IMG/VR virus record: IMGVR_UViG_3300032931_001151
Location: 62,001 to 126,000 of that record
Reading direction: 5' to 3' (one strand)
Length of the DNA: 64,000 nucleotides
Shown here: positions 1,923 through 46,082 of the stretch, in pieces
Layout of the letters: each line of letters begins with the position of its first letter
How positions within the stretch are numbered: position 1 is the stretch's first letter
Made by a program: the position numbers and the translations under genes
The notes under the pieces: model-generated
What the model saw: the letters and a program-made list of their open reading frames with translations, nothing else
Told to the model about the DNA's origin: nothing
Database searches by the model: none

Positions 1923-1958
1923 AATCCCTTTTTGATATAATATATGTAAGAAGGGATT
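1923..1958 (+). promoter_or_regulatory. hairpin with extended -10 (TGaTATAAT) in the loop and RBS in the 3' arm
   Basis: AATCCCTTTTT (1923-1933) pairs with AAGAAGGGATT (1948-1958); TATAAT 1936-1941; ATG 1963. Confidence 0.65.
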
Positions 1959-1962
1959 TGAT

Positions 1963-2217
1963 ATGGAACAACTTGTTTGTACTTTAGAATCGGTATCGGG
2001 ATGTGGGTTACAAACAATCCAAATATTTACTCCTAAAGTAATTAAAGTAAACGACAAACTAAATAATTTAATAGATTATTTAGTTTTTTGTAATGGAGAT
2101 GATTATATTTTAGTGTTACCACCTAGAGATATTCACAAAGAAGCATTAAAAATAAAATGTTTATATCCTCTATTAGAAGTCGAAGTTATAAATACAAGGA
2201 TAAAACTATCCTTCTAA
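1963..2217 (+). CDS. hypothetical protein
   Basis: AAGGGA RBS, open frame. Confidence 0.65.
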   Translation: MEQLVCTLESVSGCGLQTIQIFTPKVIKVNDKLNNLIDYLVFCNGDDYILVLPPRDIHKEALKIKCLYPLLEVEVINTRIKLSF

Positions 2218-2225
2218 AATATAAA

Positions 2226-2253
2226 TTGACAAATTATGTTTATGCAATAAAAT
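2226..2253 (+). promoter_or_regulatory. sigma70-type promoter
   Basis: TTGACA 2226-2231, 16-nt spacer, TAAAAT 2248-2253, then AAGGAG RBS. Confidence 0.7.
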
Positions 2254-2272
2254 CATGTGAAGGAGAACACGA

Positions 2273-2719
2273 ATGACTAAAACAAATAAAATAGAAAAAC
2301 ATTATTTAGTGGTATGCGATGTAGGCCCACTTATTATGACCGAGAATAAAGATAAGGCTATTAATTCACTTAAAATAGCGAGACTAAAAGGTCATAGGGG
2401 GTATGTACAAGAAATAACAGCATCCACCGAAAGACTTAAAGAAATAGGGAAGAATCTTTTTAAACGAAAAATATCGCCCAATGAAAGAATGAATATACTC
2501 ATTACAAGAGGAAAAATAATTCGTGAATTCATTGATGTCCGTGATGATAATGATTTTACCGATGAAGTTGCTTGGAAAAAAGTTACAAAGAATAACCAAT
2601 TAACAGGATTTAGCGACTTGGACGATTTTAGTCAATGGACCCTTGATGTCCGTGAATTCAATCCCCACGACAACCCTAAATTACTATTAGACGAGGGAAT
2701 TGATGGATCAGATAATTGA
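2273..2719 (+). CDS. hypothetical protein
   Basis: Strong AAGGAG RBS and upstream promoter. Confidence 0.75.
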   Translation: MTKTNKIEKHYLVVCDVGPLIMTENKDKAINSLKIARLKGHRGYVQEITASTERLKEIGKNLFKRKISPNERMNILITRGKIIREFIDVRDDNDFTDEVAWKKVTKNNQLTGFSDLDDFSQWTLDVREFNPHDNPKLLLDEGIDGSDN

Positions 2720-3032
2720 TAGAATAAATAAACTCTCTAAAAGTGATAATAAAAACTTACTAGAAACTTGTATAAAAATTCAGGAAGAAGTTGGAGAATT
2801 GTCCGCAGAACTTCTTAAAATAAGAGGTAAAAAAGGCTCTAATGGACAATTAAGGTTTCAAATTGAAGAAAATATACTAGAAGAATGTTGTGATGTGCTT
2901 ATTATGGCATTTTCTTTATTAAATAAATTTAAGTTCAATAGAACTAAGATTAAAAAAGCATTTAATAAAAAACTTGATAAAGCTGAGATTAACATTAAGA
3001 AACAAAAAATATGGAAGAAACAAATTAAATGA
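2703..3032 (+). CDS. MazG-like NTP pyrophosphohydrolase
   Basis: KIQEEVGELSAE ... EECCDVLI acidic metal-binding motifs; ATG 2703 follows GAGGG. Confidence 0.8.
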   Translation: MDQIIDRINKLSKSDNKNLLETCIKIQEEVGELSAELLKIRGKKGSNGQLRFQIEENILEECCDVLIMAFSLLNKFKFNRTKIKKAFNKKLDKAEINIKKQKIWKKQIK

Positions 3033-3271
3033 ATATTAATGATGCGATTAAAATTATGAAGTTTTCAGTTAAAAATGAAATTGCTAAAGCCTACTTAGAA
3101 ACACTAGAATACTCAATAGACGATCACGGAACCCATGGGTTAGTAAATCAGTTGAATTATATTATGTGCAATGTTTCCTCATGGAAAGGTTCTCAAGCAA
3201 AAGAAGTCAAAACCTTTGTAAAAGATTGGATTAAAGAAAAAAATGGAAATAATACAATCTCCCCCCGATAA
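3029..3271 (+). CDS. hypothetical protein
   Basis: ATGA overlap with upstream stop. Confidence 0.7.
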   Translation: MNINDAIKIMKFSVKNEIAKAYLETLEYSIDDHGTHGLVNQLNYIMCNVSSWKGSQAKEVKTFVKDWIKEKNGNNTISPR

Positions 3272-3680
3272 GTGGATTAAACATTGGCTTAAAATAGCAC
3301 TTGTTACGTCCGAATTAAGCAAAGATCCTCGAACAAAAGTCGGCGCTTGCGTGGTAACACCTGACAATAGGCAATGTTCATTAGGTTATAATGGATTTGC
3401 TAATGGCATTGAAGACTTAGCAGAACGATGGAATAATAGAGCAATTAAATATGAATTTTGTATTCATGCCGAAGAAAATGCTATTATTAATAGCCCGTTT
3501 GACACTAAAGGGTGTACTTTATTTTGCACTCTTCAATGTTGCCATAAATGCATGGCAAGAATAGTTAGAGCGGGAATTAAAAAAGTTTACTATCTAAAGC
3601 CATATGACAATATAACTCATCTTGACATTATTGAAGCCCATTCAAAACTACTTGACGAGATAAGACAAGTTTCTATATAG
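3243..3680 (+). CDS. dCMP deaminase
   Basis: SKDPRTKVGA, GYNG, HAEENA and CxxC (CCHKC) zinc motifs. Confidence 0.92.
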   Translation: MEIIQSPPDKWIKHWLKIALVTSELSKDPRTKVGACVVTPDNRQCSLGYNGFANGIEDLAERWNNRAIKYEFCIHAEENAIINSPFDTKGCTLFCTLQCCHKCMARIVRAGIKKVYYLKPYDNITHLDIIEAHSKLLDEIRQVSI

Positions 3681-3693
3681 ACTTACAAAGAAC

Positions 3694-3720
3694 TTGACTT
3701 TCCAAAAAGTACTATATAAT
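3694..3720 (+). promoter_or_regulatory. probable sigma70-type promoter for rIIA
   Basis: TTGACT 3694-3699, TATAAT 3715-3720 (15-nt spacer, suboptimal), intergenic. Confidence 0.5.
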
Positions 3721-3756
3721 TACCCTCAAGATAACCAACATTATTAAGAGGAATTT

Positions 3757-5943
3757 ATGAAACTCGACTTTGATACTACAATTATTGAAAGATCCGAAGA
3801 CTTTGAGGAGCAAACTTTCGGATTCTCCGATGTTACAATAGTCATGGAAATTCTTAGGTCAAAACTCTATTCAAACCCTATTAAGGTGTTAGTTCAAGAA
3901 TATATGAGTAATGCCCGTGATGCTCATAGAGAAATTGATAATAATCAACCCATTGAAGTTCAATTGCCTTCCCACATTTCGCCACAATTTGAGGTTAGAG
4001 ATTTTGGCCCCGGAATAACACCAAAAAGAATGAGTAACGTATTCATTAAATATGCGGCATCAACAAAGCGAGACTCTAATAAGATGACTGGTGGGTGGGG
4101 ATTAGGATCAAAGAGTGGTTGGAGCTATTCCGACACTTTTAGTGTAATATCTATTACTAACGAAACCGGTGAAAATATTAAAAGAACTTATTCTTGCATC
4201 ATTGATGAAACTCGTAATGGTAAACTCGTGAAAATGTGCGACGACGCAAAAACCGAAGAACCATGTGGTACTCGTATCATTGTGCCGGCTCGTAAAGAAA
4301 ATTTCAATCAATTTAGAGACTATGCGGTTCAAACGGGAACCCTATGGGAAGTGAAACCAATAATTTTTGGCCAAACCATTAATAACCCATCCATCATTAG
4401 CGAAGGTGCTAATTGGAAGTATTTTGAGCGTCACACTGTTCCTACCGACTTTATATCTAATAAAGCATTTGTTGTATATGATGGGATTCCTTATCCTTTA
4501 AAAACCGAAACTTTAAAAAATTTGATTTCGGATGAGGTAATGGCTGTACTAAATAGTTCTTGTTTCGGTCTATATTTTAATATTGGCGATATTACTATCT
4601 CCGCTAACCGTGAGGAAATTCAATATACGGAGAAAACTAAAAACACATTAGCAACCCGAGTAAACGAGATGGTATCCGAGATAGCAAGTAAATTCTCGGA
4701 TACTATTCAACAAGAGCCAACATTCATTGACGCTCTTATGAAGTTTAATGACATTTCTAAAGAGAATGACGTAATCGCCAAACTTATTAGCAATTCGGTT
4801 GAATGGAACGGAACCAAACTCCACCGTATTAACCAACTTAATACTATGGATAAGGCTGTTAAAATTGAAAATTTCTATTACGATGATGGTAAACTATGCC
4901 ATATTAGGAATGCCTATGTACATCTAGAAAATAAAGATAAATTTAAAAAAATCTATATTAATGATGAAAAACTTCGTGGTGCTCCAATTTCTAAAATGCG
5001 TGGGTTGTTTTATTCTAGTTCTAAATCAGACCAGGAATCGTTTGATGTTTATGTTATCTCATATCAAACCAATAACCCCAAAGGTCTATCACAACAAGAA
5101 ATTGATAATGCAAATGTAAGTATTAATAAGTGGAATAAAGAAAACTTTATTGGTTTAATGGATCTACAAACTACATCATCCATCAAAAAATCAATAATCC
5201 CAAAAGGAATTTCTCAACCTAAAGTGATAGGAAAACTTGTAACCTATAGAGAGTTGAAATTAAACGTAGGATCCGATTATGCGGTTACTATAGAACATGA
5301 GGATATTGATAGCACATTAAGCGGATATTATACTCTAATACATGAAGGAAGATTTTCAATTGGAGGATCGAGATACAATATTAGAGATTCGTGGGAAATG
5401 AGAAATCTACACCGTAGATTAAAATTAGTTCTAAGCCACTTAAAAGTTGATAAAATTCTTTTATTTACTCAAAAGTACACGAAAAATATCTCCGAAAATA
5501 AGAATTTAATTCATTTGCCTATAGATATTTCAAAAGATATTGTAAATTCGTTTGATTCTAATAAGATAAAAGAATATACTAAGTATGTTCGTGGAGATAA
5601 AATGTATAATCACGAATTCTTTAAACTACTAAGTCCCATGAAACATATGGATAGATTTAATGTTGGTAGTAAGATTAGAGAGAAGTTAGAGTCAATGTTA
5701 CATAATGAAAAATATATTGCCACTCAAGAATATAAAGAAATGAATTCTTTATATGAAGAATTTAATCACGTTATTAAAGATCTATATAAAGTAGATGGCG
5801 ATTCCACCCAAGACGAAGACTCTTTTTCTAAAAAATATCCGCTTTTATCTGATAGGTATTATGGGTATCATACTAGTAGTAATGAAACATTCGTTGAGCA
5901 TGCGATTAACTATATTAATTTTGTTGACAATGGTAAAAATTGA
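3757..5943 (+). CDS. rIIA: RIIA-like protein (N-terminal GHKL ATPase)
   Basis: LYSNPIKVLVQEYMSNARDAH, VRDFGPG, STKR..N..GGWGLGSKS, ISANREEIQY; followed by rIIB. Confidence 0.9.
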   Translation: MKLDFDTTIIERSEDFEEQTFGFSDVTIVMEILRSKLYSNPIKVLVQEYMSNARDAHREIDNNQPIEVQLPSHISPQFEVRDFGPGITPKRMSNVFIKYAASTKRDSNKMTGGWGLGSKSGWSYSDTFSVISITNETGENIKRTYSCIIDETRNGKLVKMCDDAKTEEPCGTRIIVPARKENFNQFRDYAVQTGTLWEVKPIIFGQTINNPSIISEGANWKYFERHTVPTDFISNKAFVVYDGIPYPLKTETLKNLISDEVMAVLNSSCFGLYFNIGDITISANREEIQYTEKTKNTLATRVNEMVSEIASKFSDTIQQEPTFIDALMKFNDISKENDVIAKLISNSVEWNGTKLHRINQLNTMDKAVKIENFYYDDGKLCHIRNAYVHLENKDKFKKIYINDEKLRGAPISKMRGLFYSSSKSDQESFDVYVISYQTNNPKGLSQQEIDNANVSINKWNKENFIGLMDLQTTSSIKKSIIPKGISQPKVIGKLVTYRELKLNVGSDYAVTIEHEDIDSTLSGYYTLIHEGRFSIGGSRYNIRDSWEMRNLHRRLKLVLSHLKVDKILLFTQKYTKNISENKNLIHLPIDISKDIVNSFDSNKIKEYTKYVRGDKMYNHEFFKLLSPMKHMDRFNVGSKIREKLESMLHNEKYIATQEYKEMNSLYEEFNHVIKDLYKVDGDSTQDEDSFSKKYPLLSDRYYGYHTSSNETFVEHAINYINFVDNGKN

Positions 5944-5951
5944 TATATAAT
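5924..5951 (+). promoter_or_regulatory. sigma70-type promoter for rIIB overlapping the rIIA 3' end
   Basis: TTGACA 5924-5929, 16-nt spacer, TATAAT 5946-5951. Confidence 0.75.
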
Positions 5952-5977
5952 AAACAAATAACTTTTAGGAGAACACC

Positions 5978-6958
5978 ATGAGATATCTTATAACCCCCAA
6001 ATGCATTTCTTTAAATTACGATGGAAATACTAAAGTAGTTGAGAAAACGGATAGTCGTTTCCAACCAATTATAGACGCCATTAAAGCCAAAAACTTTGAC
6101 GTAATTCCCGGAATTATTGATGGACTTAAAAACGCCATTGCAACTAGTACAAATAAGGATTTTAAAGTTGATAATGGTTTAGTATATATTGATAATAAAT
6201 CAGTTGGTGGTAGAATTAGCGAAAAGATCGTTGAGTATGTAAATGCTGGACTAGATCCAATTAGCCTTGTTAATTTTTGGAGGAATTTACAATTAAATCC
6301 TTCATATAGAGCAAGAGAGGCGTTATTTTCCTTCCTTGAAAATGGGAATCATCCTATTACGGACGATGGGCACTTTATCGCATATAAGAAAGTACGAAGC
6401 AATATGAAAGACGGTCATAATGGGACTTTTGATAACTCTGTTGGGGCTAAACCATCAATGCCACGAGATCAAGTTGACGACGATCCGACACACACTTGCG
6501 CTCCAGGGCTGCATGTGGCGTCCTGGGAGTATGCACAAAACTATAGTGGAACGGTTCTTATTGATTGTAAGGTAAATCCCATGAATGTCGTTGCCGTCCC
6601 AATTGATTATAATTTTATGAAGATGCGTACTTGTGGATATGAAGTTATTGCCGTGGCTAAAGAGAAAAGGCAAGAGCTACATATTAGCGACAATAAAGAT
6701 ATTACTAGCGATGACGCTACGGATATTGATCCTGATGATATAAATCTAAATGATAATAATGAAGATTTTGACTATAATAATATGGATAATGTTGACTACC
6801 AACAAGGCGTGGACGACGCTAACGCTTTGATAACTTACTTCAAGTCAATTGGAAGAGAATATACTTACGACGAGTTCATTGAACTAAAGAGATTTGAGAA
6901 TAAATCGGATAGTTACAAATGTGGAATTGAGGAAGTGGCAGACGAAAAACTATCTTAA
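5978..6958 (+). CDS. rIIB: RIIB-like protein
   Basis: FWRNLQLNPS, LFSFL, ITDDGHFIAYKKVR, MPRDQVDDDP..TC..GLHV, KVNP.NVVAVP.DY. Confidence 0.92.
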   Translation: MRYLITPKCISLNYDGNTKVVEKTDSRFQPIIDAIKAKNFDVIPGIIDGLKNAIATSTNKDFKVDNGLVYIDNKSVGGRISEKIVEYVNAGLDPISLVNFWRNLQLNPSYRAREALFSFLENGNHPITDDGHFIAYKKVRSNMKDGHNGTFDNSVGAKPSMPRDQVDDDPTHTCAPGLHVASWEYAQNYSGTVLIDCKVNPMNVVAVPIDYNFMKMRTCGYEVIAVAKEKRQELHISDNKDITSDDATDIDPDDINLNDNNEDFDYNNMDNVDYQQGVDDANALITYFKSIGREYTYDEFIELKRFENKSDSYKCGIEEVADEKLS

Positions 6959-6975
6959 ATTTAAGTAGATTTTGG

Positions 6976-7011
6976 AATCCCCTTGGGTATAATTACTCAA
7001 GGGGATTTTTT
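6976..7011 (+). terminator. terminator-like hairpin with TATAAT at the loop and the next gene's RBS in the 3' arm
   Basis: AATCCCCTTGGGTA / TACTCAAGGGGATT 14-bp stem (one G-U), T-run, ATG at 7012. Confidence 0.75.
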
Positions 7012-7677
7012 ATGGAAAATATTATTGAAATTGAGTTAAATCCGGAATTTCATATAAGCAAATTTCTAACCACTAACGTTAGAAAGTTGGCATTGTACAT
7101 TCCTACTATTGATCAATTAATGCCAACCGAAAGTAACTATTTTGGTCTAAAGGAGATGACATATGGTAATATCATATTAGATCAAGAAAGCGGATTGGTG
7201 GCTTTAACGGTTAGACAATTCTTTAAAGCATTACTTTCAAATATGCCATATGCGTATGAAATCGCTTGCACTCCCCATTCCAATATAGTAGCGGATTCCC
7301 AATTAGGATTTGAAATATTAAATTTCGGAAAAACCCATCTTATTTCTAAGCCCATTATAGATAAGTACTTAAAAAGCTTCACAGAAGATAAAATAACGGG
7401 GAATTATACAAGAGCATATAGAATCGGAACCGTTCTAAAGAGATTGTATAGAGGATTAAGAACTACCGAAATGACGAACGAAGAAACCGAATTATATAAC
7501 CACTTATTAAGTGATACCGTTAAATTAGAAGATATTGAATTTTCTTTAACGCATATGGATGTTGAATTCCAATCTATTGAGCCTACTATAAACTATAATG
7601 ATATATTTCCACCAATTGATATAAATTACATAAATCAATTTTTAATTCAAACCCATAAGGATTACTTAAAACTATGA
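7012..7677 (+). CDS. degenerate Pol-beta-superfamily (YcgL/RlaP-like) nucleotidyltransferase
   Basis: LYIPTIDQL and VRQFFKALLSNMPYAYEIACTP and RAYRI resemble the family's downstream motifs; no GS..YG....SDxD. Confidence 0.5.
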   Translation: MENIIEIELNPEFHISKFLTTNVRKLALYIPTIDQLMPTESNYFGLKEMTYGNIILDQESGLVALTVRQFFKALLSNMPYAYEIACTPHSNIVADSQLGFEILNFGKTHLISKPIIDKYLKSFTEDKITGNYTRAYRIGTVLKRLYRGLRTTEMTNEETELYNHLLSDTVKLEDIEFSLTHMDVEFQSIEPTINYNDIFPPIDINYINQFLIQTHKDYLKL

Positions 7678-8000
7678 CATTAGAAGAAGATGTTACTTGG
7701 ATTATGGAGAGATGTCCGAAATTAAACTCTTTAGCCGTTTTAGAGCCATCAGCACAAGCAATTGCTATTATGTTGGCAATCGGGGGAAATAACCCCTTCA
7801 ATGAACAAGAAATGGCTAAACTATCGCTTGTTGGCATCATAGCCATGCATTGCCGCAAAATAGATGAAGAAAGATTTCAAACGTTGTCTCCTTACGCTTA
7901 CTTACAAATTGCCAACGCTTATATAGATGAAAATGATACATCGGGGGTTAATTATAAGGAACTCGTAAATAAAATTAAAAATATTATAAAGTTAATTTAA
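7674..8000 (+). CDS. hypothetical protein
   Basis: ATGA overlap. Confidence 0.7.
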   Translation: MTLEEDVTWIMERCPKLNSLAVLEPSAQAIAIMLAIGGNNPFNEQEMAKLSLVGIIAMHCRKIDEERFQTLSPYAYLQIANAYIDENDTSGVNYKELVNKIKNIIKLI

Positions 8001-8004
8001 TTAA

Positions 8005-8012
8005 TATAAATA
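8005..8012 (+). promoter_or_regulatory. T4-type late promoter TATAAATA
   Basis: Exact octamer in a 28-nt intergenic gap just before AGGAG RBS and ATG 8029. Confidence 0.55.
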
Positions 8013-8028
8013 GGTTTAGGAGATACAA

Positions 8029-8334
8029 ATGGATAATTTTTCTACTTGGTACTACAATAATAAGAATAAAAAAGTTGACGTATCAATGGCACCATCAGAA
8101 AAGATGTTTTTTGATGTTGTTGGTATAAAAATTCCATCTCTTAAGGCTTTCATATCTTGGTTAATATTGAAGAAATTGATTAATCCAATAATTAAAGAAA
8201 AAGATAAGAAAACATTGAATTTATTGTCCTTACCGGTTGAAAAAAAAGTTCATTATCTCGTTAGTAAATTGAAAGATATAGATAAACTAGCTAATGAGTA
8301 TAATAAAATATTTGGGGAATCGCCCAAAGAATAA
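8029..8334 (+). CDS. hypothetical protein, probably late-expressed
   Basis: AGGAG RBS, late-promoter motif. Confidence 0.7.
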   Translation: MDNFSTWYYNNKNKKVDVSMAPSEKMFFDVVGIKIPSLKAFISWLILKKLINPIIKEKDKKTLNLLSLPVEKKVHYLVSKLKDIDKLANEYNKIFGESPKE

Positions 8335-8368
8335 TTAAGTTTATCTTGTGAATTAATGAAAGGCTGTT

Positions 8369-8542
8369 ATGATATTATTCATAGGTATGATTTTATGCTC
8401 ATTGATTTTATGGGCATTCTCTCACTTTGGAATTAAAAATTACGAATACGATCACGAAGAAAGTATGCTTACTGCTAAAATAGTTAATTTAATAGTATTT
8501 GCTATATTGTTAACATTAATAAGTTTGAAGCATTTTTTATGA
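8369..8542 (+). CDS. small two-TM membrane protein (57 aa, not in ORF track)
   Basis: AAGG RBS; MILFIGMILCSLILWAFSHFGIKNYEYDHEESMLTAKIVNLIVFAILLTLISLKHFL has two hydrophobic stretches. Confidence 0.7.
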   Translation: MILFIGMILCSLILWAFSHFGIKNYEYDHEESMLTAKIVNLIVFAILLTLISLKHFL

Positions 8543-8577
8543 ATTTGGAAGTATAATAACAATTAAGGAGAACATTT

Positions 8578-8805
8578 ATGTCATATGCTACATCACAGGG
8601 TAAAGCCTACACTCTAATGGATCTTGAAAGACTTGCAAAAGTTGAGACTTTCGGACAATTCACCGGAGCTATCTTAGGACTTATCCAAAGATCCAAACAA
8701 CTTGAAGCTGAAAACGCCTTCTATAAAAAGAATGCATTAGATGCCGAATCATATAAAAGCCAATTGATGGAATTAAGAAGAGAAGTAAACGAATTAAAGA
8801 AGTAA
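8578..8805 (+). CDS. hypothetical coiled-coil protein
   Basis: AAGGAG RBS, TATAAT at 8552. Confidence 0.75.
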   Translation: MSYATSQGKAYTLMDLERLAKVETFGQFTGAILGLIQRSKQLEAENAFYKKNALDAESYKSQLMELRREVNELKK

Positions 8806-8808
8806 AAT

Positions 8809-9939: not shown

Positions 9940-10496
9940 AAAAGAAAAACTCTTCTAAAAATGTTTCTAAAGAAGTACAAGATATATTCTTTAATACAGA
10001 CATTAAAGACGAAGAAGAAATTGTTGATACTACAACGGAAGAGACAATAGAATCTCCGGAAGAGATCCTATCAACGCTAGATGAAGATAAAGAGGTTGAA
10101 GTACCCGAAACCGTGCCTATTCCAGATGGTAGCATTAACGATACCGAACAATTTACGGTAGTTGCTTCATATTCCGATGACGGCGAAGAAGTTAAAACTG
10201 TACAATGTATAAGAAAAAATCAACCACCACCCGAATCTACTTGGGCCGATAAAAAATGTAAGTTTAAGTGTGGACAAAAAATAATGCCTAGAGTAATAAA
10301 GAAAAAAGACATCCCAAATTATGAATGTGCCGTCGTTATTAGCCCCGGAACGTATCCCGACACATATATAATTAAAATATCTAGATCGTTAAATGAAACA
10401 CAAGTTATAGGAAATAATTGGGAAGAGGCAAGTGATAAATGTAAGCCATACGTTAGTTTTTGGGAAGCTAATTCACCACCAAAAAGGATTTTATGA
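9909..10496 (+). CDS. hypothetical protein (basic N-terminus, acidic middle)
   Basis: AAGGA RBS, open frame. Confidence 0.7.
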   Translation: MPRGRKKNSLKKKNSSKNVSKEVQDIFFNTDIKDEEEIVDTTTEETIESPEEILSTLDEDKEVEVPETVPIPDGSINDTEQFTVVASYSDDGEEVKTVQCIRKNQPPPESTWADKKCKFKCGQKIMPRVIKKKDIPNYECAVVISPGTYPDTYIIKISRSLNETQVIGNNWEEASDKCKPYVSFWEANSPPKRIL

Positions 10497-10978: not shown

Positions 10979-10987
10979 AAGGGCTTT

Positions 10988-11500: not shown

Positions 11501-11504
11501 TATT

Positions 11505-12152: not shown

Positions 12153-12153
12153 A

Positions 12154-12441: not shown

Positions 12442-12452
12442 AGGATCAACGT

Positions 12453-33676: not shown

Positions 33677-33686
33677 TCATTGACCT

Positions 33687-39422: not shown

Positions 39423-39431
39423 TGCGTTTCC

Positions 39432-42400
39432 TTATTGTTCTAGTTCTAGTATTATATTTCCAAGTTGAGGAAATTCGTATGGTCCTAATATGATTTTCAA
39501 ACTATAGTCCCAACTCGTTGTCCCGTTAGTATTTAGTGAACTAAATAGTGGTTGGAATATTCTAACAAGTGATGGATCTTTTGTAACTAATTCCATTAGT
39601 TTATTTCTTCTAGCTATATCGGTTTGTTCTTGTGTAGAATATATAGTATTTATAGATGCAACATAATCGGATGGAGTAAGCTTATTGTCGGGATTCTTAT
39701 TTAACATTACTTCAAACGAATCCACCGCATCAATAGCACTTATTAAATTTCCAATATATGAGTTCTCTATAGTTTCACCTAGATTGTGATTAGTATAGTT
39801 GAAATAATCTCCTATAGATTGTTTTATTTGTGATTCAATAATATCCGGATTTCCATAACTTTTTGCTTTATATCTAACAAGAACATCAATTGGAACCCAA
39901 GTTGCGGGAATTACGACGTGCTTTTTCCCAATAACTTTGACTGGATCACTATCAAGAGTATTAACTATTAAATCGTTTAAATTCTTACTGATAGTATTAG
40001 TGCCATCTTTGTTCAATATAATGACGAACACATAATTAAAGAAATAATTAGAATTTTCGGTTGAACTTATTAATCCTGCAGATTTAGCTTCTTCGTAATC
40101 CAAAACTTTTGCTCTTACTACGTAATCATTAAATACTTGTTCAACATAATTTAGCGTATCGTTAACCGAAACGTTTCTACCTTGACTCGTAAAGTAGTTT
40201 GTTGCATTTCTTCTTAACTCGTCAACCGTTTCTACATTATTTCCGCCAAATGCATTTTGATTTTGAATAATAGTCAAGTCGGTCGTTTGTAGTTTTGTTC
40301 CCTCAGAATCTACTAATCTTGTTTCAGGTGAAGACCCATTAAAATATTGTTGAGTCTTTAATCCCAACAATTCAACGAAATTATCTTCAAATTTAATATC
40401 TGTTTGGTCGTTTCCTAAAATATATTGCGAAACAATTATTTGATCGTTGAGAGTTGATTTATTGATATTGCCATCATTTCCAACAGAATTTAATCCAATA
40501 ATAAAAGTTTCTTTATCTAATGGCGAGGATCCATAGTTAACACCATCCCCAAAATCAATAGTAATTAATTGATCGGGGTTTGCTCTAACGAAAAATACTT
40601 GTTGCCCAACTGCTATATCCGAATTAAACCCAGTCCCCGAGCGTTTCCACTCATCCCATGTCCCAGAATCGTTTTTAACGAAAACTCTTAAGCTATTAAT
40701 AGATATATTTGAGTTATTAACTATATATCTAACATCATTGTCCGACAATCTTGATGGATCTATAGATATATTTAATCCATTATTGTTTGTATCTATGTTA
40801 GTACTTTTATCAATATATGTAAATGTAATTTGTCCTTGTAATAAATTATTAATGGCAAAAGTTTCGGGGACGTTCGTGAATCTTAAACCGGGTATAGTAG
40901 CAGCACTTGAGGTGCTTCCAGAAAAATCTATTTCGCCATGGCGTTGGAATGCGTATCCAGTACTACTATCAACATACCAATTTATAGTAACCACTTGATC
41001 TGTTATACCTGGCTCAATATTAATAGTAAACCCACTTGAACTCTTATTAGTATAATAGGTAACTAAATTAGCATCTGGAACTAGTTGTATAGCATAATTT
41101 GTATCGGTAATAGGAGTCTTGAGTTGTATGGCACCACTCGTTTCTCCTGGACGCAATACTATAGTTCCAATTTGTCTATATCCGCTTTCTGGTTCCGATG
41201 GAATGGTATCATTTTGGAAGAAATTGAAAATACTCCAACTTATCTTACCCGAAAAAGATTTTTCGGTTTTTACAGAGAACCCAGTTGTTCCAGCATTCTC
41301 ATACCATACTTGAATGTTATCATTAGGAGTTAATTGAACCATATAATTAGAAGTTAGACCATCTTGACTTATTCCTAATGGCATAGGTGTGTCAAATACT
41401 ACATCTTTTTGTTTAACATTCTCTTGAACTATTCTAGTAGCCGACCAACCAATAGTTCCAGCAAATTGTGTATTTGGTTCAACATATATAGTAAATCCGC
41501 TCTCATCCGAATTAGAATACCAAGTTCTAACATTATCTGAAGGAGTTAATTGAATGCTATATTCAACTTTAACTTCATTAGGATTTAACACGAAAGCACT
41601 ATTAAAATACACTTTTTGCGATGTTACTCCACTTCCAAATGTAACTTGGCCAGCTTTTTGTTCAGACGTTTGTATTGGCTCAGGTTCAACAACTTGGAAA
41701 TTTCCAAATTTTGTACTATTTGAAGTTGCTAATGCTGACGTTGAGGTTGTTGAATCTATGAAATTTGTAGTAATAGTAGCAATAGTAACTTGATTAGATA
41801 AAGGAGCATTAGCCGTTACTTCTAATCTAGCACCATAGTTGTTTATTGAATCGGTTTCATCTGCAATGACCAAATTAATATTATATGTAGGAACGTCGGA
41901 GCTAAAGAAGTTCTTGTCAAATTGTTGACTTGAAATAGTCCCGCTACTAAAAGTATAAAATACACCATTAATCAACACGGTTAATGGAGATTGAGATCCA
42001 TCTTTATTAACTACCAAATTTATTTGCTTTATAGCATTTGGAACATCTTGAAAATAAGAGAATTCAAGCTTAGTGCTATCTAAATTCTGTAGCCCTAAAA
42101 CTCCAGTAAAAAATCTATTAATTGTGCCATCTTCATAGAATTTTAATGAATAATTCATATTAGTATTGTCGGTTGGTTGAAGAATAATTGCTACTAATAT
42201 ATCATTTGCTTTTTCACCTAGGGTAGTCTTATCTTCCGCTATACTAATATATGGTGATGATGTATTCTTATCCCAATTGAATATTAAGTAATACGGAGTA
42301 TTAGGCACCATCGTCTTACTATACGCTATCGTTGGGATAGTTTGGATGAATGGTTGCCCAACCGAATTTGGATTACTTGGGTCAAATAATGGATAATTAG

Positions 42401-43046
42401 TAGTATCAAAACCTCTATAATTATTACTATCTGGTAAATTAATAATACTTAATGGCTTTTGAAGTGATAAAGGTAAACCTAATCCCGTAGGATTAATTGT
42501 TATATTACCTAATGAATCCGAGAAGAAACTTGCGGGAGCCTCAAATGGCAAGGCATAATTATTATAACTAATATCTGTTATATCTATTGGGGAAATACCA
42601 AACGCTTTAACTAATTGAACATGAGATGTTGTATTCGTGAAATTAAAATTAGTATTTGACGTAGTTGGTTTAGTTGAAGGGAATATTGAATATGCTGGAA
42701 TTTCAATATACTTTCCAGCTTTACCGTAAACGTATGACGGAGTTAGTGCTCCTAATACGTTCAATGATGCTGAAGTTACACCACGAGCGTCATATCTAAG
42801 CATTTGGGCTATCTTATTGAGATTCTTATATCTCTTGGCAGTCGGTAAGAATACTTCGTTAGCCGCCGAATTTATATAATACCCATTTAGCGATCCAATC
42901 CAAGCCCATATAGTTACTAATGTATTAATATTAGATTGAGTTAGATCGGCATCTTTATATGTTTGGGTTTGTTGTAAATAAGTAATTATGTCACTTTTTA
43001 GAGCGTCTATATCATAACTAGTATAATCAATTGTCGTTTTCTGCAT
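39432..43046 (-). CDS. baseplate wedge protein (T4 gp6-like), expanded by internal insertion
   Basis: DYTSYDIDALKSDIITYL, YYIN.AANEVFLPTA, IDFGDGVNYG..P, GGNNVETVDELR.NA..YFTSQGR.V. Confidence 0.9.
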   Translation of the reverse strand: MQKTTIDYTSYDIDALKSDIITYLQQTQTYKDADLTQSNINTLVTIWAWIGSLNGYYINSAANEVFLPTAKRYKNLNKIAQMLRYDARGVTSASLNVLGALTPSYVYGKAGKYIEIPAYSIFPSTKPTTSNTNFNFTNTTSHVQLVKAFGISPIDITDISYNNYALPFEAPASFFSDSLGNITINPTGLGLPLSLQKPLSIINLPDSNNYRGFDTTNYPLFDPSNPNSVGQPFIQTIPTIAYSKTMVPNTPYYLIFNWDKNTSSPYISIAEDKTTLGEKANDILVAIILQPTDNTNMNYSLKFYEDGTINRFFTGVLGLQNLDSTKLEFSYFQDVPNAIKQINLVVNKDGSQSPLTVLINGVFYTFSSGTISSQQFDKNFFSSDVPTYNINLVIADETDSINNYGARLEVTANAPLSNQVTIATITTNFIDSTTSTSALATSNSTKFGNFQVVEPEPIQTSEQKAGQVTFGSGVTSQKVYFNSAFVLNPNEVKVEYSIQLTPSDNVRTWYSNSDESGFTIYVEPNTQFAGTIGWSATRIVQENVKQKDVVFDTPMPLGISQDGLTSNYMVQLTPNDNIQVWYENAGTTGFSVKTEKSFSGKISWSIFNFFQNDTIPSEPESGYRQIGTIVLRPGETSGAIQLKTPITDTNYAIQLVPDANLVTYYTNKSSSGFTINIEPGITDQVVTINWYVDSSTGYAFQRHGEIDFSGSTSSAATIPGLRFTNVPETFAINNLLQGQITFTYIDKSTNIDTNNNGLNISIDPSRLSDNDVRYIVNNSNISINSLRVFVKNDSGTWDEWKRSGTGFNSDIAVGQQVFFVRANPDQLITIDFGDGVNYGSSPLDKETFIIGLNSVGNDGNINKSTLNDQIIVSQYILGNDQTDIKFEDNFVELLGLKTQQYFNGSSPETRLVDSEGTKLQTTDLTIIQNQNAFGGNNVETVDELRRNATNYFTSQGRNVSVNDTLNYVEQVFNDYVVRAKVLDYEEAKSAGLISSTENSNYFFNYVFVIILNKDGTNTISKNLNDLIVNTLDSDPVKVIGKKHVVIPATWVPIDVLVRYKAKSYGNPDIIESQIKQSIGDYFNYTNHNLGETIENSYIGNLISAIDAVDSFEVMLNKNPDNKLTPSDYVASINTIYSTQEQTDIARRNKLMELVTKDPSLVRIFQPLFSSLNTNGTTSWDYSLKIILGPYEFPQLGNIILELEQ

Positions 43047-43058
43047 TTTAGTGTACCC

Positions 43059-43448
43059 TTAAAGTTTCGCTATTACTATTTTTGCGGTGTCGTTTTCTTG
43101 TAACTCTTGAATAAAGTAATTAATTTCAATATCTATTTTATTATTATCCGAATCAACGTTAACCTTAACATAGTTAATTACAATTCTATTCTCATAGGTA
43201 TTTAGAGCATTCTTTATACTATTTTGAATACTTATTGATGTTTTATCATCTATTAATTCAAATAAGTAAGAAGTTGCCGTACAACCGAAGCCCGGATCAA
43301 AAAGCCTTGACCCTAAAGGAGTTAGAACAATTGTCTTAACGGCTTGTCTAATAGAATCTAAATTTATAACCTTACTCGCATCACCAAAATGATTTAATAT
43401 TGGATTAAATGCCAAATCGGAATAAATTTCAGGTTGGGTGGTTGCCAT
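43059..43448 (-). CDS. baseplate wedge subunit (T4 gp25-like)
   Basis: YSDL, SIRQAVKTIVLTPLGSRLFDPGFGC..LFE, YENRI. Confidence 0.93.
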   Translation of the reverse strand: MATTQPEIYSDLAFNPILNHFGDASKVINLDSIRQAVKTIVLTPLGSRLFDPGFGCTATSYLFELIDDKTSISIQNSIKNALNTYENRIVINYVKVNVDSDNNKIDIEINYFIQELQENDTAKIVIAKL

Positions 43449-43460
43449 ACAATAATAGAA

Positions 43461-43487
43461 TCCTTTTTGTTTATTTATATAAAAGGA
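43461..43487 (-). promoter_or_regulatory. T4-type late promoter in the loop of a short RBS-containing hairpin
   Basis: TATAAATA on minus at 43472-43479, flanked by a 7-bp inverted repeat (43461-43467 / 43481-43487) whose downstream arm holds AAGGA. Confidence 0.6.
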
Positions 43488-43490
43488 ATA

Positions 43491-45125
43491 TTATATCTTT
43501 GAAGATATATCTGGATTACCCGCCTTGTCAACACCATCGTCTTTTTCTAATGACGTTACATCTAAAGCTACTTTATCTTGTTTAGGACTATTAACGAAAC
43601 TACTTGGAGTAATTGGCGTAGTAGGATTGGCAGGCGAGGCTGGAGACGCTACACCAATATAAGGAGTAGACGGCCCTGCACCAGGGCCGGGAAAACACCC
43701 GACATGAAGAGCGTTTGATATAGGAACAGACATTTGAATGTTTCCACCAAAACCACCCGGATCAACTTTAAATGAAGATCCCGCATTTATAACAAATTGA
43801 GAATCTATATTCATAGTTGATGCTGCACCAGAGAATTTCAATGCTTGAGCATTCATATCAATTGTTTGTGCTGTCACTTTTAATGCGGAACAAATTATAC
43901 CTATCTCGTTAGATGATTGAAGTGCTATATTACCAGAAGCAATGATTTTAGTGTCCCCGGTTGAATTTAAACTCGTATTTCCCATAACGGTTGCCGACAT
44001 ATTATTATTAACGGTGGCATCAACATTGCCCCCAACTTTCATTATAACATCTTTATCTACTTGGACTTGCATATTGCCACCAATATGAGCATTCAAGTTT
44101 CCAGAAGATACTTCAACGTTAGCATGACCCTTCTCAACAACTATATCAATATCCCCCTCTCGAACGACAATCCCAACATTCTTTTTAACATTCAATTGAC
44201 AATGTTCTTCGCCTTGAATGAATATATTACCTTGAGCAAATAAATCATAATCGCCTATAATGTGTAATTCCTTATGTCCCGCAACTAATTCTTCATCATT
44301 ACTATTAATGGTACTTCCTGCCGATTTAGTAGTACCTACAATAGTTTTTCTATGACCGTATTCGCTTACAAAGGTGGTCGTACCCTTGTTTATTAAATAA
44401 TATCTTTCTTTCCCATCTTGATTGACTACTATGAATGTAGTACCATTTTTTGAAGTAAATGAGGTTACATCCTGTTGGTTAATATCATCAATTGGATATA
44501 CGTTGACTCTAGGCTTACTACAATAGGTTTGCACTAAAGCATTTTGAGCGGGAATAGATCCATTGTGAGCATTTTTATCCGGCGTAAATCCGGTTCTTAA
44601 GTTACTTACATCATTAATAGTATCGTTTACGTCTTGTGTTAATTTTCTTTGTTGTTCTTTCCAATCTTGTTGTTTTGGGCTTGTAGCCCAATATTGGGGT
44701 CTATTATGATTGCTAGAGTCAAAAAAGACCCATACTATAGTTCCCTTACGAGGAACCGTAAAGAATCCACCAGTTCCACAATCATCTTCTACCGGATCCG
44801 TGAATTTCCCACTATTAGGAGTTAACTGAGTTGCGGACTTTCCTGGCATAGTTTTTTCGTCGCCACTTGGTCTATATCTATCCGAAGATGTATCATTATT
44901 TTCTATATTATGACCACCTGACCAATATACTCCAAGACAAGGCTCGGCCCAAGGAAGGTGTAAGGTGGGAGTTTCAGCCGCAAATGGGCTATGTAGGCCA
45001 AATATTCTTACTTGTACTCTACCAGCTTTTTTCGGATCTACATTATTTTCTACAATAGCTCTATAATTCCCATTAAAGTGAGAATCGTCTTTCGTAAAAT
45101 CATCGTATTCTTGTCCAAATCCCAT
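43491..45125 (-). CDS. baseplate central spike (T4 gp5/VgrG-like OB fold + beta-helix), no lysozyme domain seen
   Basis: YRAIVENNVDPKKAGRVQVRIFGLH..LPWAEP, VP..GT.VWVFF, V.GN beta-helix repeats. Confidence 0.9.
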   Translation of the reverse strand: MGFGQEYDDFTKDDSHFNGNYRAIVENNVDPKKAGRVQVRIFGLHSPFAAETPTLHLPWAEPCLGVYWSGGHNIENNDTSSDRYRPSGDEKTMPGKSATQLTPNSGKFTDPVEDDCGTGGFFTVPRKGTIVWVFFDSSNHNRPQYWATSPKQQDWKEQQRKLTQDVNDTINDVSNLRTGFTPDKNAHNGSIPAQNALVQTYCSKPRVNVYPIDDINQQDVTSFTSKNGTTFIVVNQDGKERYYLINKGTTTFVSEYGHRKTIVGTTKSAGSTINSNDEELVAGHKELHIIGDYDLFAQGNIFIQGEEHCQLNVKKNVGIVVREGDIDIVVEKGHANVEVSSGNLNAHIGGNMQVQVDKDVIMKVGGNVDATVNNNMSATVMGNTSLNSTGDTKIIASGNIALQSSNEIGIICSALKVTAQTIDMNAQALKFSGAASTMNIDSQFVINAGSSFKVDPGGFGGNIQMSVPISNALHVGCFPGPGAGPSTPYIGVASPASPANPTTPITPSSFVNSPKQDKVALDVTSLEKDDGVDKAGNPDISSKI

Positions 45126-45137
45126 TAATATGCCTTT

Positions 45138-45398
45138 TTAATAAAAGAGTACTAACCAAACTATCTTTTCAACATGAGTTTCGGGATCGGCTTTAACGGT
45201 TTCAAGAACATTCAACCCATTATAAAACCAATGCTCACGAGCATATGACATCAACTCATTATATTTATCGGGGGTTGGTTCAAGTTCTACTATATCACCT
45301 ATGACATCTTCATATTTTGCCCATTCGGATTTAGGCAAAGTTCCTTTAAGAACCATTCGAGATGTATCTTTAGATGTTTCTATGGCTATTGAAGACAT
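45138..45398 (-). CDS. hypothetical protein
   Basis: Tight packing on minus strand. Confidence 0.65.
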   Translation of the reverse strand: MSSIAIETSKDTSRMVLKGTLPKSEWAKYEDVIGDIVELEPTPDKYNELMSYAREHWFYNGLNVLETVKADPETHVEKIVWLVLFY

Positions 45399-45399
45399 A

Positions 45400-46035
45400 T
45401 TATTTGACTATACTAATATCATCATTATCTAAAGAAACATTATTCCAATCTTGGATTATTTTTCTAGTAACAACTCTACCGTTAATCATGGTATCAAAAT
45501 ATGCGGCGACTTGTAGTATCCCATTCACAACCCTAGTTTCAGTTTGAAAATATCCTTCGGATTGTGTACTCTTTATTGGAAAAGTATCACTTGGTTTATC
45601 TACTATTCCCAAATTAGCACTAATTCTTTTAGAAGTTTCTTCGTCTACTTTATATTCTCCTGGAATATTCTCCGGAATCTTAACTGGGCCTGATATATAT
45701 CCGTGTATATCAGTCATACATTCATATTCTTTTTCCAAATCAGCAATAGAATTTGAACCCGTTGCTTTTTTTGTAGATGCTAATAAAGTGTTATATTTCT
45801 CAAGAAGTACCTTGATTTCACCGTCTTTATCATTAAGTTTACTTTCAAGCACCTTATTAGCATCTTTTAAGATTGCAACTTCTTCATTAGTATGGGCTTC
45901 TAGATCGGATCCATGAGTAAGATTACTTACGAATTTTATTATTCCACCCTGAGAAGTAATATTAGAATAAATTTCTTTATCTTTAAGGGCCGATGTTAAT
46001 ATTGAATTATATAATTCTTGGGGTATGTCTAACAT
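45400..46035 (-). CDS. hypothetical protein with coiled coil
   Basis: AAGGAG RBS inside upstream hairpin. Confidence 0.7.
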   Translation of the reverse strand: MLDIPQELYNSILTSALKDKEIYSNITSQGGIIKFVSNLTHGSDLEAHTNEEVAILKDANKVLESKLNDKDGEIKVLLEKYNTLLASTKKATGSNSIADLEKEYECMTDIHGYISGPVKIPENIPGEYKVDEETSKRISANLGIVDKPSDTFPIKSTQSEGYFQTETRVVNGILQVAAYFDTMINGRVVTRKIIQDWNNVSLDNDDISIVK

Positions 46036-46041
46036 ATAAGA

Positions 46042-46082
46042 AATCTCCTTCGTGATATGACTATTATATCACGAAGGAGATT
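46042..46082 (-). promoter_or_regulatory. perfect 17-bp hairpin containing TGaTATAAT and the RBS of 45400-46035
   Basis: AATCTCCTTCGTGATAT (46042-46058) / ATATCACGAAGGAGATT (46066-46082). Confidence 0.8.

What the first reader, a model, noticed from the sequence alone, without database searches (positions are those of the whole stretch)
1923..46082. Recurrent hairpin with a -10 box at the loop and the Shine-Dalgarno in the 3' arm
Seen at 1923-1958 (+), 6976-7007 (+) and 46042-46082 (-): AATC(C/T)C..TT ... TATAAT ... AAGG(G/A)(G)ATT followed within 4-6 nt by ATG. A weaker version at 43461-43487 (-) has the late TATAAATA in the loop. Knowledge: T4 silences e, soc and I-TevI on read-through early transcripts with RBS-sequestering hairpins that late-promoter transcripts lack. 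Inference: the same logic is used here with sigma70-type -10 boxes, so each gene is translated only from its own promoter while upstream read-through is terminated or silenced.
Basis: partly seen in the sequence, partly recalled or inferred. Interest (0 to 1): 0.65.

Follow-up and report, generated by a model that had tools for sequence, protein, structure and literature searches.

The report
Promoter-containing hairpins that mask ribosome sites
In this T4-like phage about ten genes are preceded by an RNA hairpin that hides the ribosome-binding site on read-through transcripts, while a promoter inside the hairpin should produce transcripts that escape it; this trick is known for T4 late genes and is used here mostly with ordinary -10 boxes.

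Summary
The fourth, the late-box site at 43461-43487, is not (z -1.55). The window lies in a 214-kb T4-like phage with no close relatives.

Across the genome, 79 of 260 genes have TATAAT or TATAAATA 8-42 nt before the start codon. Ten of these form a discrete class. The DNA upstream of the box is specifically complementary to the Shine-Dalgarno region (permutation p=1e-5). Opening the ribosome site costs 10-18 kcal/mol on read-through RNA and 0.5-4 on RNA predicted to start at the internal promoter.

Seven of the ten carry a -35-less TATAAT box, five of them with an extended TGn. Three carry the late box. Three of the ten genes are homing endonucleases, as in T4.

The same layout occurs in about 16 unrelated IMG/VR phage lineages. 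There it often has a full TTGACA-17-TGnTATAAT promoter whose spacer is the 5' arm.

The T4 e/soc/I-TevI logic fits, and only some sites also look like terminators. No transcript data exist. I rate it a new variant of a known kind.

The parts
1630..1917 (+). Upstream co-directional gene of site 1 (DUF6899). Its stop lies 5 nt before the 5' arm.
1923..1958 (+). Site 1 hairpin. Core arms are 1923-1933 and 1948-1958. The extended -10 TGATATAAT is at 1933-1941 and the SD AAGGGA at 1951-1956. The ATG is at 1963.
   Evidence: (dG -13.3, z -3.55). Opening energy is 15.4 kcal/mol on read-through RNA and 4.1 on promoter RNA.
1963..2217 (+). 84-aa ORFan controlled by site 1
   Evidence: no family
5978..6958 (+). 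rIIB, the upstream co-directional gene of site 2, with its own canonical TTGACA..TATAAT promoter
6974..7009 (+). Site 2 hairpin. The 5' arm is 6974-6989, the UAAU loop 6990-6993 and the 3' arm 6994-7009. The -10 TATAAT is at 6988-6993, the SD AAGGGGA at 6999-7005 and the T6 tract at 7006-7011. The ATG is at 7012. This site is also terminator-like.
   Evidence: (dG -23.9, z -5.44). Opening energy is 17.6 versus 1.5 kcal/mol. The predicted promoter RNA is unstructured.
7012..7677 (+). 221-aa ORFan controlled by site 2
   Evidence: no family, no relatives
46089..46622 (-). HNH endonuclease gene with a canonical TTGACA-17-TATAAT promoter. It is the upstream co-directional gene of site 3.
46042..46082 (-). 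Site 3 hairpin. The 5' arm is 46082-46066, the loop 46065-46059 and the 3' arm 46058-46042. The extended -10 TGATATAAT is at 46071-46063 and the SD AAGGAG at 46050-46045. The ATG is at 46035-46033.
   Evidence: dG -25.5, z -7.75; 17 nt, 100% complementary. Opening energy is 17.1 versus 3.9 kcal/mol.
45400..46035 (-). 211-aa ORFan controlled by site 3. It heads the block with the gp5-like hub (43491-45125), gp25 (43059-43448) and gp6-like wedge (39432-43046).
46690..46733 (+). Arms are 46695-46700 and 46718-46723, plus 46690-46694 paired with 46729-46733. The -10-like TATAGT is at 46706-46711 and the SD AGGAGA at 46716-46721. The ATG is at 46730. It precedes a 54-aa ORF and the 386-aa endonuclease gene at 46894-48054.
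   Evidence: opening energy 10.8; dG -12.1, z -3.35
43461..43487 (-). It is not supported as a member.
   Evidence: 3.9 versus 3.5 kcal/mol; z -1.55

Best explanation
These are composite 'promoter-in-hairpin' elements. RNA that reads through from the upstream co-directional gene contains both arms. It folds into a stable hairpin whose 3' arm is the Shine-Dalgarno sequence, so the downstream gene is translationally silent on that RNA. Where a U-tract follows (site 2, genome 205855, perhaps site 3), transcription probably also stops there. A promoter box sits at the apex or in the inner 5' arm: TATAAT, usually -35-less with an extended TGn, or the T4-type late TATAAATA. RNA polymerase starting about 7 nt downstream of the box makes an RNA that lacks the 5' arm. 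On that RNA the ribosome site is free, on a leader of about 12-20 nt. The gene is therefore expressed only from its own promoter.

Shown here: the hairpins exist, they are significant, the 5' arm is specific for its own SD, the geometry fits, the boxes are associated with gene starts, and the design recurs elsewhere.

Inferred: the actual transcription starts, the existence of read-through RNA, the translational silencing, and the timing class of the -35-less promoters.
For: - Hairpin significance.
- Specific complementarity. I compared the duplex energy between the 30 nt upstream of each box and the stretch from the box end to the ATG for each gene's own pair against cross-gene pairs. At <= -14 kcal/mol there are 7 observed versus 0.83 expected (p=1e-5). 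At <= -12 there are 10 versus 3.0 (p=4e-4).
- Opening energy. For ten genes the SD..AUG region costs 10.3-18.5 kcal/mol to open on read-through RNA and 0.5-4.1 on predicted promoter RNA. For all ten, 0 of 30 shuffles of the upstream part reach the observed value.
- Predicted promoter RNAs of sites 1-3 are no more structured than shuffles.
- Ribosome sites with opening energy >=12 kcal/mol occur in 9 of 79 genes with a box and 1 of 181 without (Fisher p=1e-4). The exception is a likely mis-called TTG start after a terminator.
- In nine of ten members the predicted start lies 3' of the core 5' arm, and nine of ten have a co-directional upstream gene.
- The boxes are real promoter motifs. The share of genomic copies lying 8-42 nt before a gene start is 21 of 42 for TGnTATAAT, 25 of 40 for TATAAATA and 18 of 23 for TTGAC[AT]-N16-18-TATAAT, against about 2% by chance.
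- Three of the ten controlled genes are homing endonucleases. That is the gene class for which this mechanism was proven in T4 and Aeh1 (PMC2988022, PMC3014915).
- The same layout gives 30 hits in IMG/VR, against 3 for a control with a non-complementary 5' arm. At least 13 hits have TTGAC(A/C)-17-TGnTATAAT with the 5' arm as the spacer, followed by an ATG opening an ORF.
- My pipeline recovers T4 I-TevII (13.0 to 0.4 kcal/mol) and the sequestered site of gene 49. It recovers soc only weakly.
Against: - There is no transcript or translation evidence. No sequencing run was listed and the phage has no relatives for comparison.
- Restricted to genes with an intergenic gap of at least 25 nt, the association between sequestered site and box weakens: 9 of 65 versus 1 of 36, p=0.09.
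- Given the compact spacing of promoter and ribosome site in this genome (modal 17-21 nt), any SD-sequestering hairpin will enclose the box. '-10 in the loop' is therefore not independent evidence.
- Sites 1-3 lack a -35, and site 2 also lacks TGn, so promoter activity is least certain there.
- In T4 itself several sequestered ribosome sites have no nearby box.
- Covariation in the one orthologous family I could test, from another phage lineage, is weak: one compensatory pair, and 22 of 500 shuffles reach the score.
- With the assumed start, the leader of site 2 begins at the SD itself.
Confidence: 0.6

Rival explanations
1. The hairpins are primarily intrinsic terminators or 3'-end stabilisers of the upstream transcription unit. 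They overlap the next gene's promoter and ribosome site only because the genome is compact, as in PeSL composite elements. SD sequestration would then be incidental. This is not mutually exclusive with the best explanation.
For: Site 2 is a 14-16-bp G+C-rich stem followed by T6. Genome 205855 is followed by T7, and site 3 by TTTCTTAT. PeSL stem-loops in RB49 and phi1 were shown to terminate (PMC2839356). Site 3 separates an early-promoter HNH gene from the baseplate block. PeSLs are proposed to prevent exactly this kind of spill-over.
Against: Most of the ten members have no U-tract: genome 164954, 211471, 188895, 136173 and 158320. Site 1 has only TTT. What all ten share is the SD in the 3' arm, not a terminator tail. 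The genome's ordinary terminators are a different kind, of the form AAATAAAGGGG..CCCCTTTATTTTTTT. The simple terminator scan did not flag sites 1 or 2.
Confidence: 0.2
2. The hairpin is a translational-coupling device. It keeps the downstream ribosome site closed until a ribosome finishing the upstream ORF melts the 5' arm, so the gene is translated from polycistronic RNA in step with its neighbour.
For: The upstream stop codon lies 0-8 nt before the 5' arm at site 1 (5 nt), site 3 (1-6 nt), genome 188895 (0), 136173 (6) and 164954 (8). That is within reach of a terminating ribosome. T4 has sequestered sites without promoters that are thought to be coupled.
Against: The distance is 16 nt at site 2, 14 at genome 7511, 23 at 205855 and 10 at 211471. 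A box at the canonical distance from the ATG is present in every member, which coupling does not require. The divergent pair at genome 158320/158741 has no upstream ORF.
Confidence: 0.08
3. The inverted repeats act at the DNA level. They could be operators for a dimeric regulator overlapping the promoter, cruciforms that pre-melt the -10, or recombination hot spots for cassette shuffling.
For: They are perfect or near-perfect palindromes centred on the -10. I-TevI-type endonucleases autorepress at operators overlapping their promoters (PMC2988022). Site 3 shares a 15-mer with the cassette upstream of genome 209349 and a 13-mer with the one at 55858. Sites 1-3 precede ORFans, as PeSLs do.
Against: Arm sequences, arm lengths (6-17 bp) and loop sizes (4 to about 40 nt) differ between members. 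The only shared arm sequence is the SD and its complement. That argues against one binding protein. In site 2 the -10 is half inside the stem. The shared 13-15-mers are explained by the TGATATAATA promoter consensus.
Confidence: 0.05

Closest known systems
T4-family RBS-sequestering hairpins with an internal promoter: genes e, soc, 49, I-TevI/II/III, segB, and Aeh1 mobE (PMC3014915 section 29; PMC2988022 section 12)
   Same: The SD/AUG is paired on transcripts from upstream promoters. A promoter lies in the 5' strand or loop, so its own transcript lacks the inhibitory strand. Homing endonuclease genes are prominent targets. Three genome members (136173-137354, 211471-212097, 7511-8323) use TATAAATA exactly as in T4.
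   Different: Sites 1-3 and four further members carry TATAAT, mostly an extended -10 without a -35, instead of the late box. The reviews stress that the known T4 cases are all late genes. Targets here also include an SbcD/gp47-like gene, a GDP-mannose dehydratase and ORFans in the rII region. Nothing has been tested experimentally.
PeSLs, promoter-early stem-loops of RB49, phi1, T4/PST and KVP40/nt-1 (PMC2839356, PMC4122927)
   Same: Both are composite intergenic elements in T4-like phages. Both comprise the stop codon of the upstream gene, a sigma70-type promoter, a stable stem-loop, and the SD and ATG of the next gene, often an ORFan. The proposed role is the same: to block spill-over of upstream early transcription.
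   Different: In the five described PeSL subclasses the whole stem-loop lies upstream of the start site, and the SD is a separate element 3' of it. Here the 3' arm lies downstream of the predicted start and is the SD, which adds a translational layer. PeSLs have strong -35 boxes, and these members do not. I saw no ~100-bp conserved repeat here.
Promoter-in-hairpin cassettes in unrelated IMG/VR phages
   Same: The order of parts is identical: 5' arm complementary to the SD, TATAAT at the apex, AAGGRGATT in the 3' arm, then a T-rich spacer and the ATG. One 88-kb phage has three copies within 10 kb.
   Different: Many have a perfect TTGACA/TTGACC -35 placed so that the 5' arm is the 17-nt spacer, plus TGn. 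About six hits are back-to-back SDs of divergent genes rather than read-through situations.

Membership tests
T4-type RBS-sequestering hairpin relieved by an internal promoter | The SD and/or AUG is held in a stable helix on long transcripts | tested here: met
   Hairpin dG is -13 to -25 kcal/mol with z -3.6 to -7.8. Opening energy is 15-18 kcal/mol for sites 1-3.
T4-type RBS-sequestering hairpin relieved by an internal promoter | The promoter is placed so that its transcript lacks the 5' strand of the helix | tested here: inconclusive
   The box position and an assumed start 7 nt downstream put the start 3' of the core 5' arm in 9 of 10 members. The predicted short RNAs are unstructured. No start site has been mapped.
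T4-type RBS-sequestering hairpin relieved by an internal promoter | The internal promoter is a late (TATAAATA, gp55-type) promoter and the gene is late | tested here: not met
Sites 1-3 carry TATAAT or TGATATAAT.
T4-type RBS-sequestering hairpin relieved by an internal promoter | Co-directional upstream transcription reads into the element | tested here: inconclusive
   The upstream gene is co-directional in 9 of 10 members, and canonical promoters precede rIIB and the HNH gene. The read-through RNA itself has not been observed.
T4-type RBS-sequestering hairpin relieved by an internal promoter | Translation is repressed on the long transcript and relieved on the short one | not testable with these tools
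   This needs reporters, toeprinting or Ribo-seq.
PeSL (promoter-early stem-loop) | A strong sigma70-like promoter with -35, -10 and an AT-rich upstream region | tested here: not met
   All seven TATAAT-type members have at most 4 of 6 matches to the -35. Five have TGn instead.
PeSL (promoter-early stem-loop) | The stem-loop lies entirely upstream of the start site, in one of five described positions, with the SD as a separate 3' element | tested here: not met
   The 3' arm contains the SD and lies downstream of the predicted start.
PeSL (promoter-early stem-loop) | The stem-loop terminates upstream transcription | tested here: inconclusive
   A U-tract is present at site 2 and genome 205855, partial at site 3, and absent from most members.
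PeSL (promoter-early stem-loop) | A conserved repeated sequence of about 100 bp flanks ORFans and mediates recombination | tested here: inconclusive
   Sites 1-3 precede ORFans. Only 13-15-nt identities between cassettes were seen. No sister genome is available for finding indels.
Rho-independent terminator | A G+C-rich stem directly followed by a U-tract | tested here: inconclusive
   Met by eye at site 2 (T6). Partial at site 3. Not met at site 1. The consensus scan flagged none of them in 1-14000.
Curated RNA families (Rfam 15) | A match at the gathering score | tested here: not met
   No matches in the window.

The most novel reading that the evidence does not exclude
A general, portable insulator cassette of phages, not restricted to T4 late genes. 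It would be a sigma70-type promoter whose upstream half encodes an anti-Shine-Dalgarno arm. One roughly 40-nt element would then terminate or translationally silence incoming transcripts and restart expression on an ultra-short leader. It would be selected repeatedly in unrelated phage lineages. It may also travel with ORFan or homing-endonuclease cassettes, making their insertion transcriptionally neutral for downstream genes.
Probability: 0.3. Interest if true: 0.65.

Novelty: new variant of a known kind. Interest (0 to 1): 0.5.

Why it matters
If the mechanism holds, regulation by transcript 5' end would not be a curiosity of a few T4 late genes. One gene could be silent on one mRNA and active on another, depending only on where that mRNA starts. 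It would be a widely reused design rule of phage genomes that also works with host-type promoters. That would affect how phage operons and expression timing are inferred from sequence. It would explain how ORFans and homing endonucleases can be inserted without disturbing their neighbours. It would also offer a compact natural part of about 40 nt, combining terminator, promoter and ribosome site with built-in insulation, for synthetic biology.

Tried and rejected
- **Relatives of this phage.** I looked for covariation at sites 1-4. Megablast against phages found nothing. Protein-seeded locus searches with the site 2 and site 3 ORFans, rIIB and gp25 in IMG/VR found nothing. rIIB in metagenome and genome contigs found nothing. 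tblastn finds only 35-41% identical proteins in cultured phages. The orthologous-conservation test was therefore impossible for this genome.
- **Expression data.** No sequencing run was listed.
- **Rfam.** No family matched in the window.
- **AsiA and MotA Pfam models in the genome.** No hit, but the control genomes did not ring either, so this is uninformative.
- **Function of the site 2 and site 3 ORFans.** Pfam, PHROGs and the Atlas gave nothing usable.
- **Homology between the site 3 gene and the genome 209349 gene.** None, although their cassettes share a 15-mer.
- **N4-like hairpin promoters.** I considered these because of the 3195-aa ORF. There is no support: that ORF has no PHROG hit, its neighbour is a gp6-like baseplate wedge, and the loops carry sigma70 or late boxes.
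- **Site 4.** Rejected as a member.
- **Covariation in the L027 gene family of another phage lineage.** Weak.
- **First, looser hairpin scans.** Too noisy to use directly.
- **Literature.** Full-text searches did not retrieve a description of the anti-SD-spacer design beyond the T4 and PeSL papers. The library is partial.

Full report
**Context.** The window is bases 62001-126000 of a 214,200-bp IMG/VR virus record with 33% G+C. It is a distant T4-like phage. The window holds rIIA (3757-5943), rIIB (5978-6958), a gp5-like hub (43491-45125), gp25 (43059-43448) and a gp6-like wedge (39432-43046). The nearest cultured proteins are only 35-41% identical. No close relative exists in the phage, IMG/VR, metagenome or genome collections. 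A crude gene call gives 260 genes covering 95% of the genome.

**Observation.** The three main sites are exactly as described.
Shuffles give 0.01 matches, although the pattern was chosen post hoc.
- As RNA the sites fold at -13.3, -23.9 and -25.5 kcal/mol, with z -3.55, -5.44 and -7.75.
- Site 2 is a 14-16-bp stem with a UAAU loop. TATAAT (6988-6993) straddles the apex, AAGGGGA (6999-7005) lies in the 3' arm, and T6 runs up to the ATG at 7012.
- Site 3 is a perfect 17-bp stem, the best short-range inverted repeat of the window. TGATATAAT lies at 46071-46063, AAGGAG at 46050-46045 and the ATG at 46035.
- Site 1 has TGATATAAT at 1933-1941 and AAGGGA at 1951-1956, with the ATG at 1963.
- Site 4, upstream of gp25, is not beyond chance (z -1.55).
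- A better fourth window member lies at 46690-46733(+). It has a -10-like TATAGT at the apex 18 nt before the ATG. It sits upstream of a small ORF and a 386-aa endonuclease gene.

**Promoter landscape.** 79 genes have TATAAT (56) or TATAAATA (23) ending 8-42 nt before the start codon, with a mode at 17-21 nt. Leaders are therefore only about 12-15 nt, and the SD follows the predicted start almost directly. The motifs are tied to gene starts. The share of genomic copies in that position is 18 of 23 for TTGAC[AT]-N16-18-TATAAT, 21 of 42 for TGnTATAAT and 25 of 40 for TATAAATA, against about 2% by chance. TATAAATA is otherwise depleted: 11 copies in the window against 23.5 expected. The -10-to-ATG distances of sites 1-3 (21, 18 and 27 nt) fit this layout.

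**Is the hairpin-with-promoter class real?** I ran three tests.
- *Own versus cross-gene complementarity.* For the 79 genes I compared the duplex energy between the 30 nt upstream of the box and the segment from the box end to the ATG, own pair against all cross-gene pairs. The bulk does not differ (Mann-Whitney p=0.11), but there is a heavy tail. At <= -14 kcal/mol there are 7 observed versus 0.83 expected (p=1e-5). At <= -12 there are 10 versus 3.0 (p=4e-4).
- *Opening energy.* I computed the energy needed to open SD..AUG on read-through RNA (-75..+30) and on RNA starting 7 nt after the box. Ten genes form a separate group. They need 10.3-18.5 kcal/mol on read-through RNA and 0.5-4.1 on promoter RNA. 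None of 30 shuffles of the upstream part reaches the observed value for any of them. The group comprises sites 1-3 and seven genes outside the window, with genome start coordinates 7511-8323(-), 136173-137354(-), 158320-158676(-), 164954-166033(-), 188895(+), 205855(+) and 211471(+).
- *Association with a box.* Ribosome sites with opening energy >=12 kcal/mol occur in 9 of 79 genes with a box and 1 of 181 without (p=1e-4). The exception is probably a mis-called TTG start after a terminator. Restricted to genes with a real intergenic spacer, the contrast is 9 of 65 versus 1 of 36 (p=0.09), so this test is only suggestive.

The predicted promoter-derived RNAs of sites 1-3 are no more structured than shuffles.

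**Anatomy of the class.** Arms, loop sizes and inner stem sequences all differ between members. The only shared element is the SD and its complement. Nine of ten members have a co-directional upstream gene. The tenth is a palindromic divergent intergenic region next to a UvsY-like gene. Seven members carry TATAAT. All seven lack a -35, and five have an extended -10 TGn. None of the 20 promoters with a good -35 is a member. Three members carry the late TATAAATA. Only site 2, genome 205855 and, more weakly, site 3 have a U-rich tail.

**Genes controlled.** Three are homing endonucleases: 136173-137354 and 211471-212097, both with late boxes, and the small HNH gene at 205855-206163. The others are a papain-family peptidase (late box), an SbcD/gp47-like nuclease subunit, a GDP-mannose 4,6-dehydratase and four ORFans, including all three window sites. 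Site 3 lies directly after an HNH endonuclease gene that has a perfect early-type promoter. It lies in front of an ORFan that heads the gp5/gp25/gp6 block.

**Elsewhere.** AATCYCCTT..TATAAT..AAGGRGATT gives 30 hits in IMG/VR, in about 16 lineages with 27-47% G+C. A control with the 5' arm reversed but not complemented gives 3. At least 13 hits have TTGACA or TTGACC exactly 17 nt upstream of TGnTATAAT, so the 5' arm is the promoter spacer, and an ATG 3-6 nt after the 3' arm opens an ORF. About six hits are back-to-back SDs of divergent genes. One 88-kb phage has three such cassettes within 10 kb, with different inner stems. In the family of one such gene (80 loci) the promoter-hairpin is kept in the closer relatives and absent from the distant ones. 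There is one compensatory U-A to A-U pair and a CCU/AGG to CCC/GGG change. Formal covariation is weak: 22 of 500 shuffles reach the score.

**Mechanism.** The best reading is the T4 mechanism. Transcripts entering from upstream fold the hairpin and cannot be translated at this gene, and at sites with U-tracts they mostly terminate. Transcripts born at the internal promoter lack the 5' arm and are translated. This mechanism was proven for T4 e and I-TevI and for Aeh1 mobE, and is accepted for soc, 49, I-TevII/III and segB (PMC3014915, PMC2988022). As a positive control, my pipeline on T4 bases 1-50000 recovers I-TevII (13.0 to 0.4 kcal/mol with TATAAATA 18 nt upstream) and the sequestered site of gene 49. 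It recovers soc only weakly. It also shows sequestered sites without boxes, so the association is not universal in T4.

**Rivals.**
- *Terminator-only, PeSL-like.* Plausible at sites 2 and 3, but not for the class as a whole.
- *Translational coupling.* The stop-to-arm distance is 0-8 nt at half of the members but 10-23 nt at the others.
- *DNA-level operator, cruciform or recombination site.* The arms share nothing but the SD.

**Comparison and novelty.** The element works like the T4 late-gene hairpins, but at sites 1-3 the box is a host-type -10 rather than the late box. The reviews note that the known cases are all late genes. The element resembles PeSLs (PMC2839356, PMC4122927) as a composite of stop codon, promoter, stem-loop, SD and ATG in front of ORFans. 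It fails two PeSL features. There is no -35, and the stem-loop is not confined upstream of the start, because its 3' arm is the SD. I therefore file it as a new variant of a known kind. The late-box members are new members of the T4 class. The cross-phage recurrence with consensus promoters is the most interesting extension, and it was not retrieved in the literature I could search.

**Limits.** Every functional step (start sites, read-through, termination, translational silencing, timing class) is inferred. Gene calls are my own crude ones. The start site is assumed at +7 from the box. The host is unknown.

Noticed in passing
Whole genome. In the window: 1 (the match starts at genome 61988, 12 nt before the window, upstream of the gene at 39), 57132(-). 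Outside: genome 143932(-), 166079(-), 168159(+), 181096(+), 183030(+), 185950(+): The motif TTGGAY-N-TAnn[AT]T, usually preceded by a T-run and often just after a terminator, occurs 17 times against about 5.8 in shuffles. Nine copies lie 20-46 nt before gene starts. It may be a third promoter class with an upstream element abutting the -10.
   Followed up: partly
Whole genome. Examples in the window: genes starting at 3757, 5978, 8578 and 46622(-): Promoter boxes end a modal 17-21 nt before the ATG. Predicted leaders are therefore only about 12-15 nt, and the SD sits almost at the 5' end of the mRNA. This is unusually compact and uniform.
   Followed up: partly
Window 1-64000: TATAAATA is depleted: 11 copies against 23.5 +/- 4.6 in shuffles. 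Yet 25 of 40 genomic copies sit just upstream of gene starts. This is consistent with selection against spurious late promoters.
   Followed up: partly
Window 46089-48054: Two divergent endonuclease genes sit immediately upstream of the baseplate module: an HNH gene at 46089-46622(-), and a 386-aa HNH/homing-type gene at 46894-48054(+) preceded by a 54-aa ORF. This looks like a mobile-element island.
   Followed up: partly
Window 16773-26360(-), 28652-33676(-), 33687-39422(-): Giant ORFs of 3195, 1674 and 1911 aa lie downstream of the gp6-like wedge gene and have no PHROG match at 1e-6. They are presumably baseplate or fibre proteins.
   Followed up: no
Genome 177760-177830 and 153761-154330 (outside the window): TATAAT lies directly in front of, or overlaps, the 5' arm of an ordinary terminator (AATAAAGGGG..CCCCTTTATT). 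At 177778 the predicted start falls inside the 5' arm, so that promoter's own transcripts would skip the terminator. This is a PeSL-like variant of the same trick.
   Followed up: no
Genome 158677-158738 (outside the window): The 64-nt intergenic region between divergent genes, one of them UvsY-like, is a near-perfect palindrome. On each strand it offers GGTATAAT and an SD paired with the complement of the other gene's SD.
   Followed up: partly
Genome about 207900-213100 (outside the window): Many strong hairpins contain tRNA-like T-arm sequences (GGTTCGAATCC), which suggests a tRNA gene cluster interspersed with HNH genes. I did not run the tRNA finder on it.
   Followed up: no
L133 (T4, NC_000866) 40157(-), gene 55: In the T4 control, the ribosome site of gene 55 needs 13.2 kcal/mol to open on long RNA and 4.3 on RNA starting after a TATAAT 29 nt upstream. 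It may be a non-late example in T4 itself. I did not check this against the mapped T4 promoters.
   Followed up: no
G000 record as a whole: IMG/VR classes the record as a 'provirus'. However, its gene content is that of a lytic T4-like phage and its G+C content is uniform, so the label looks doubtful.
   Followed up: no
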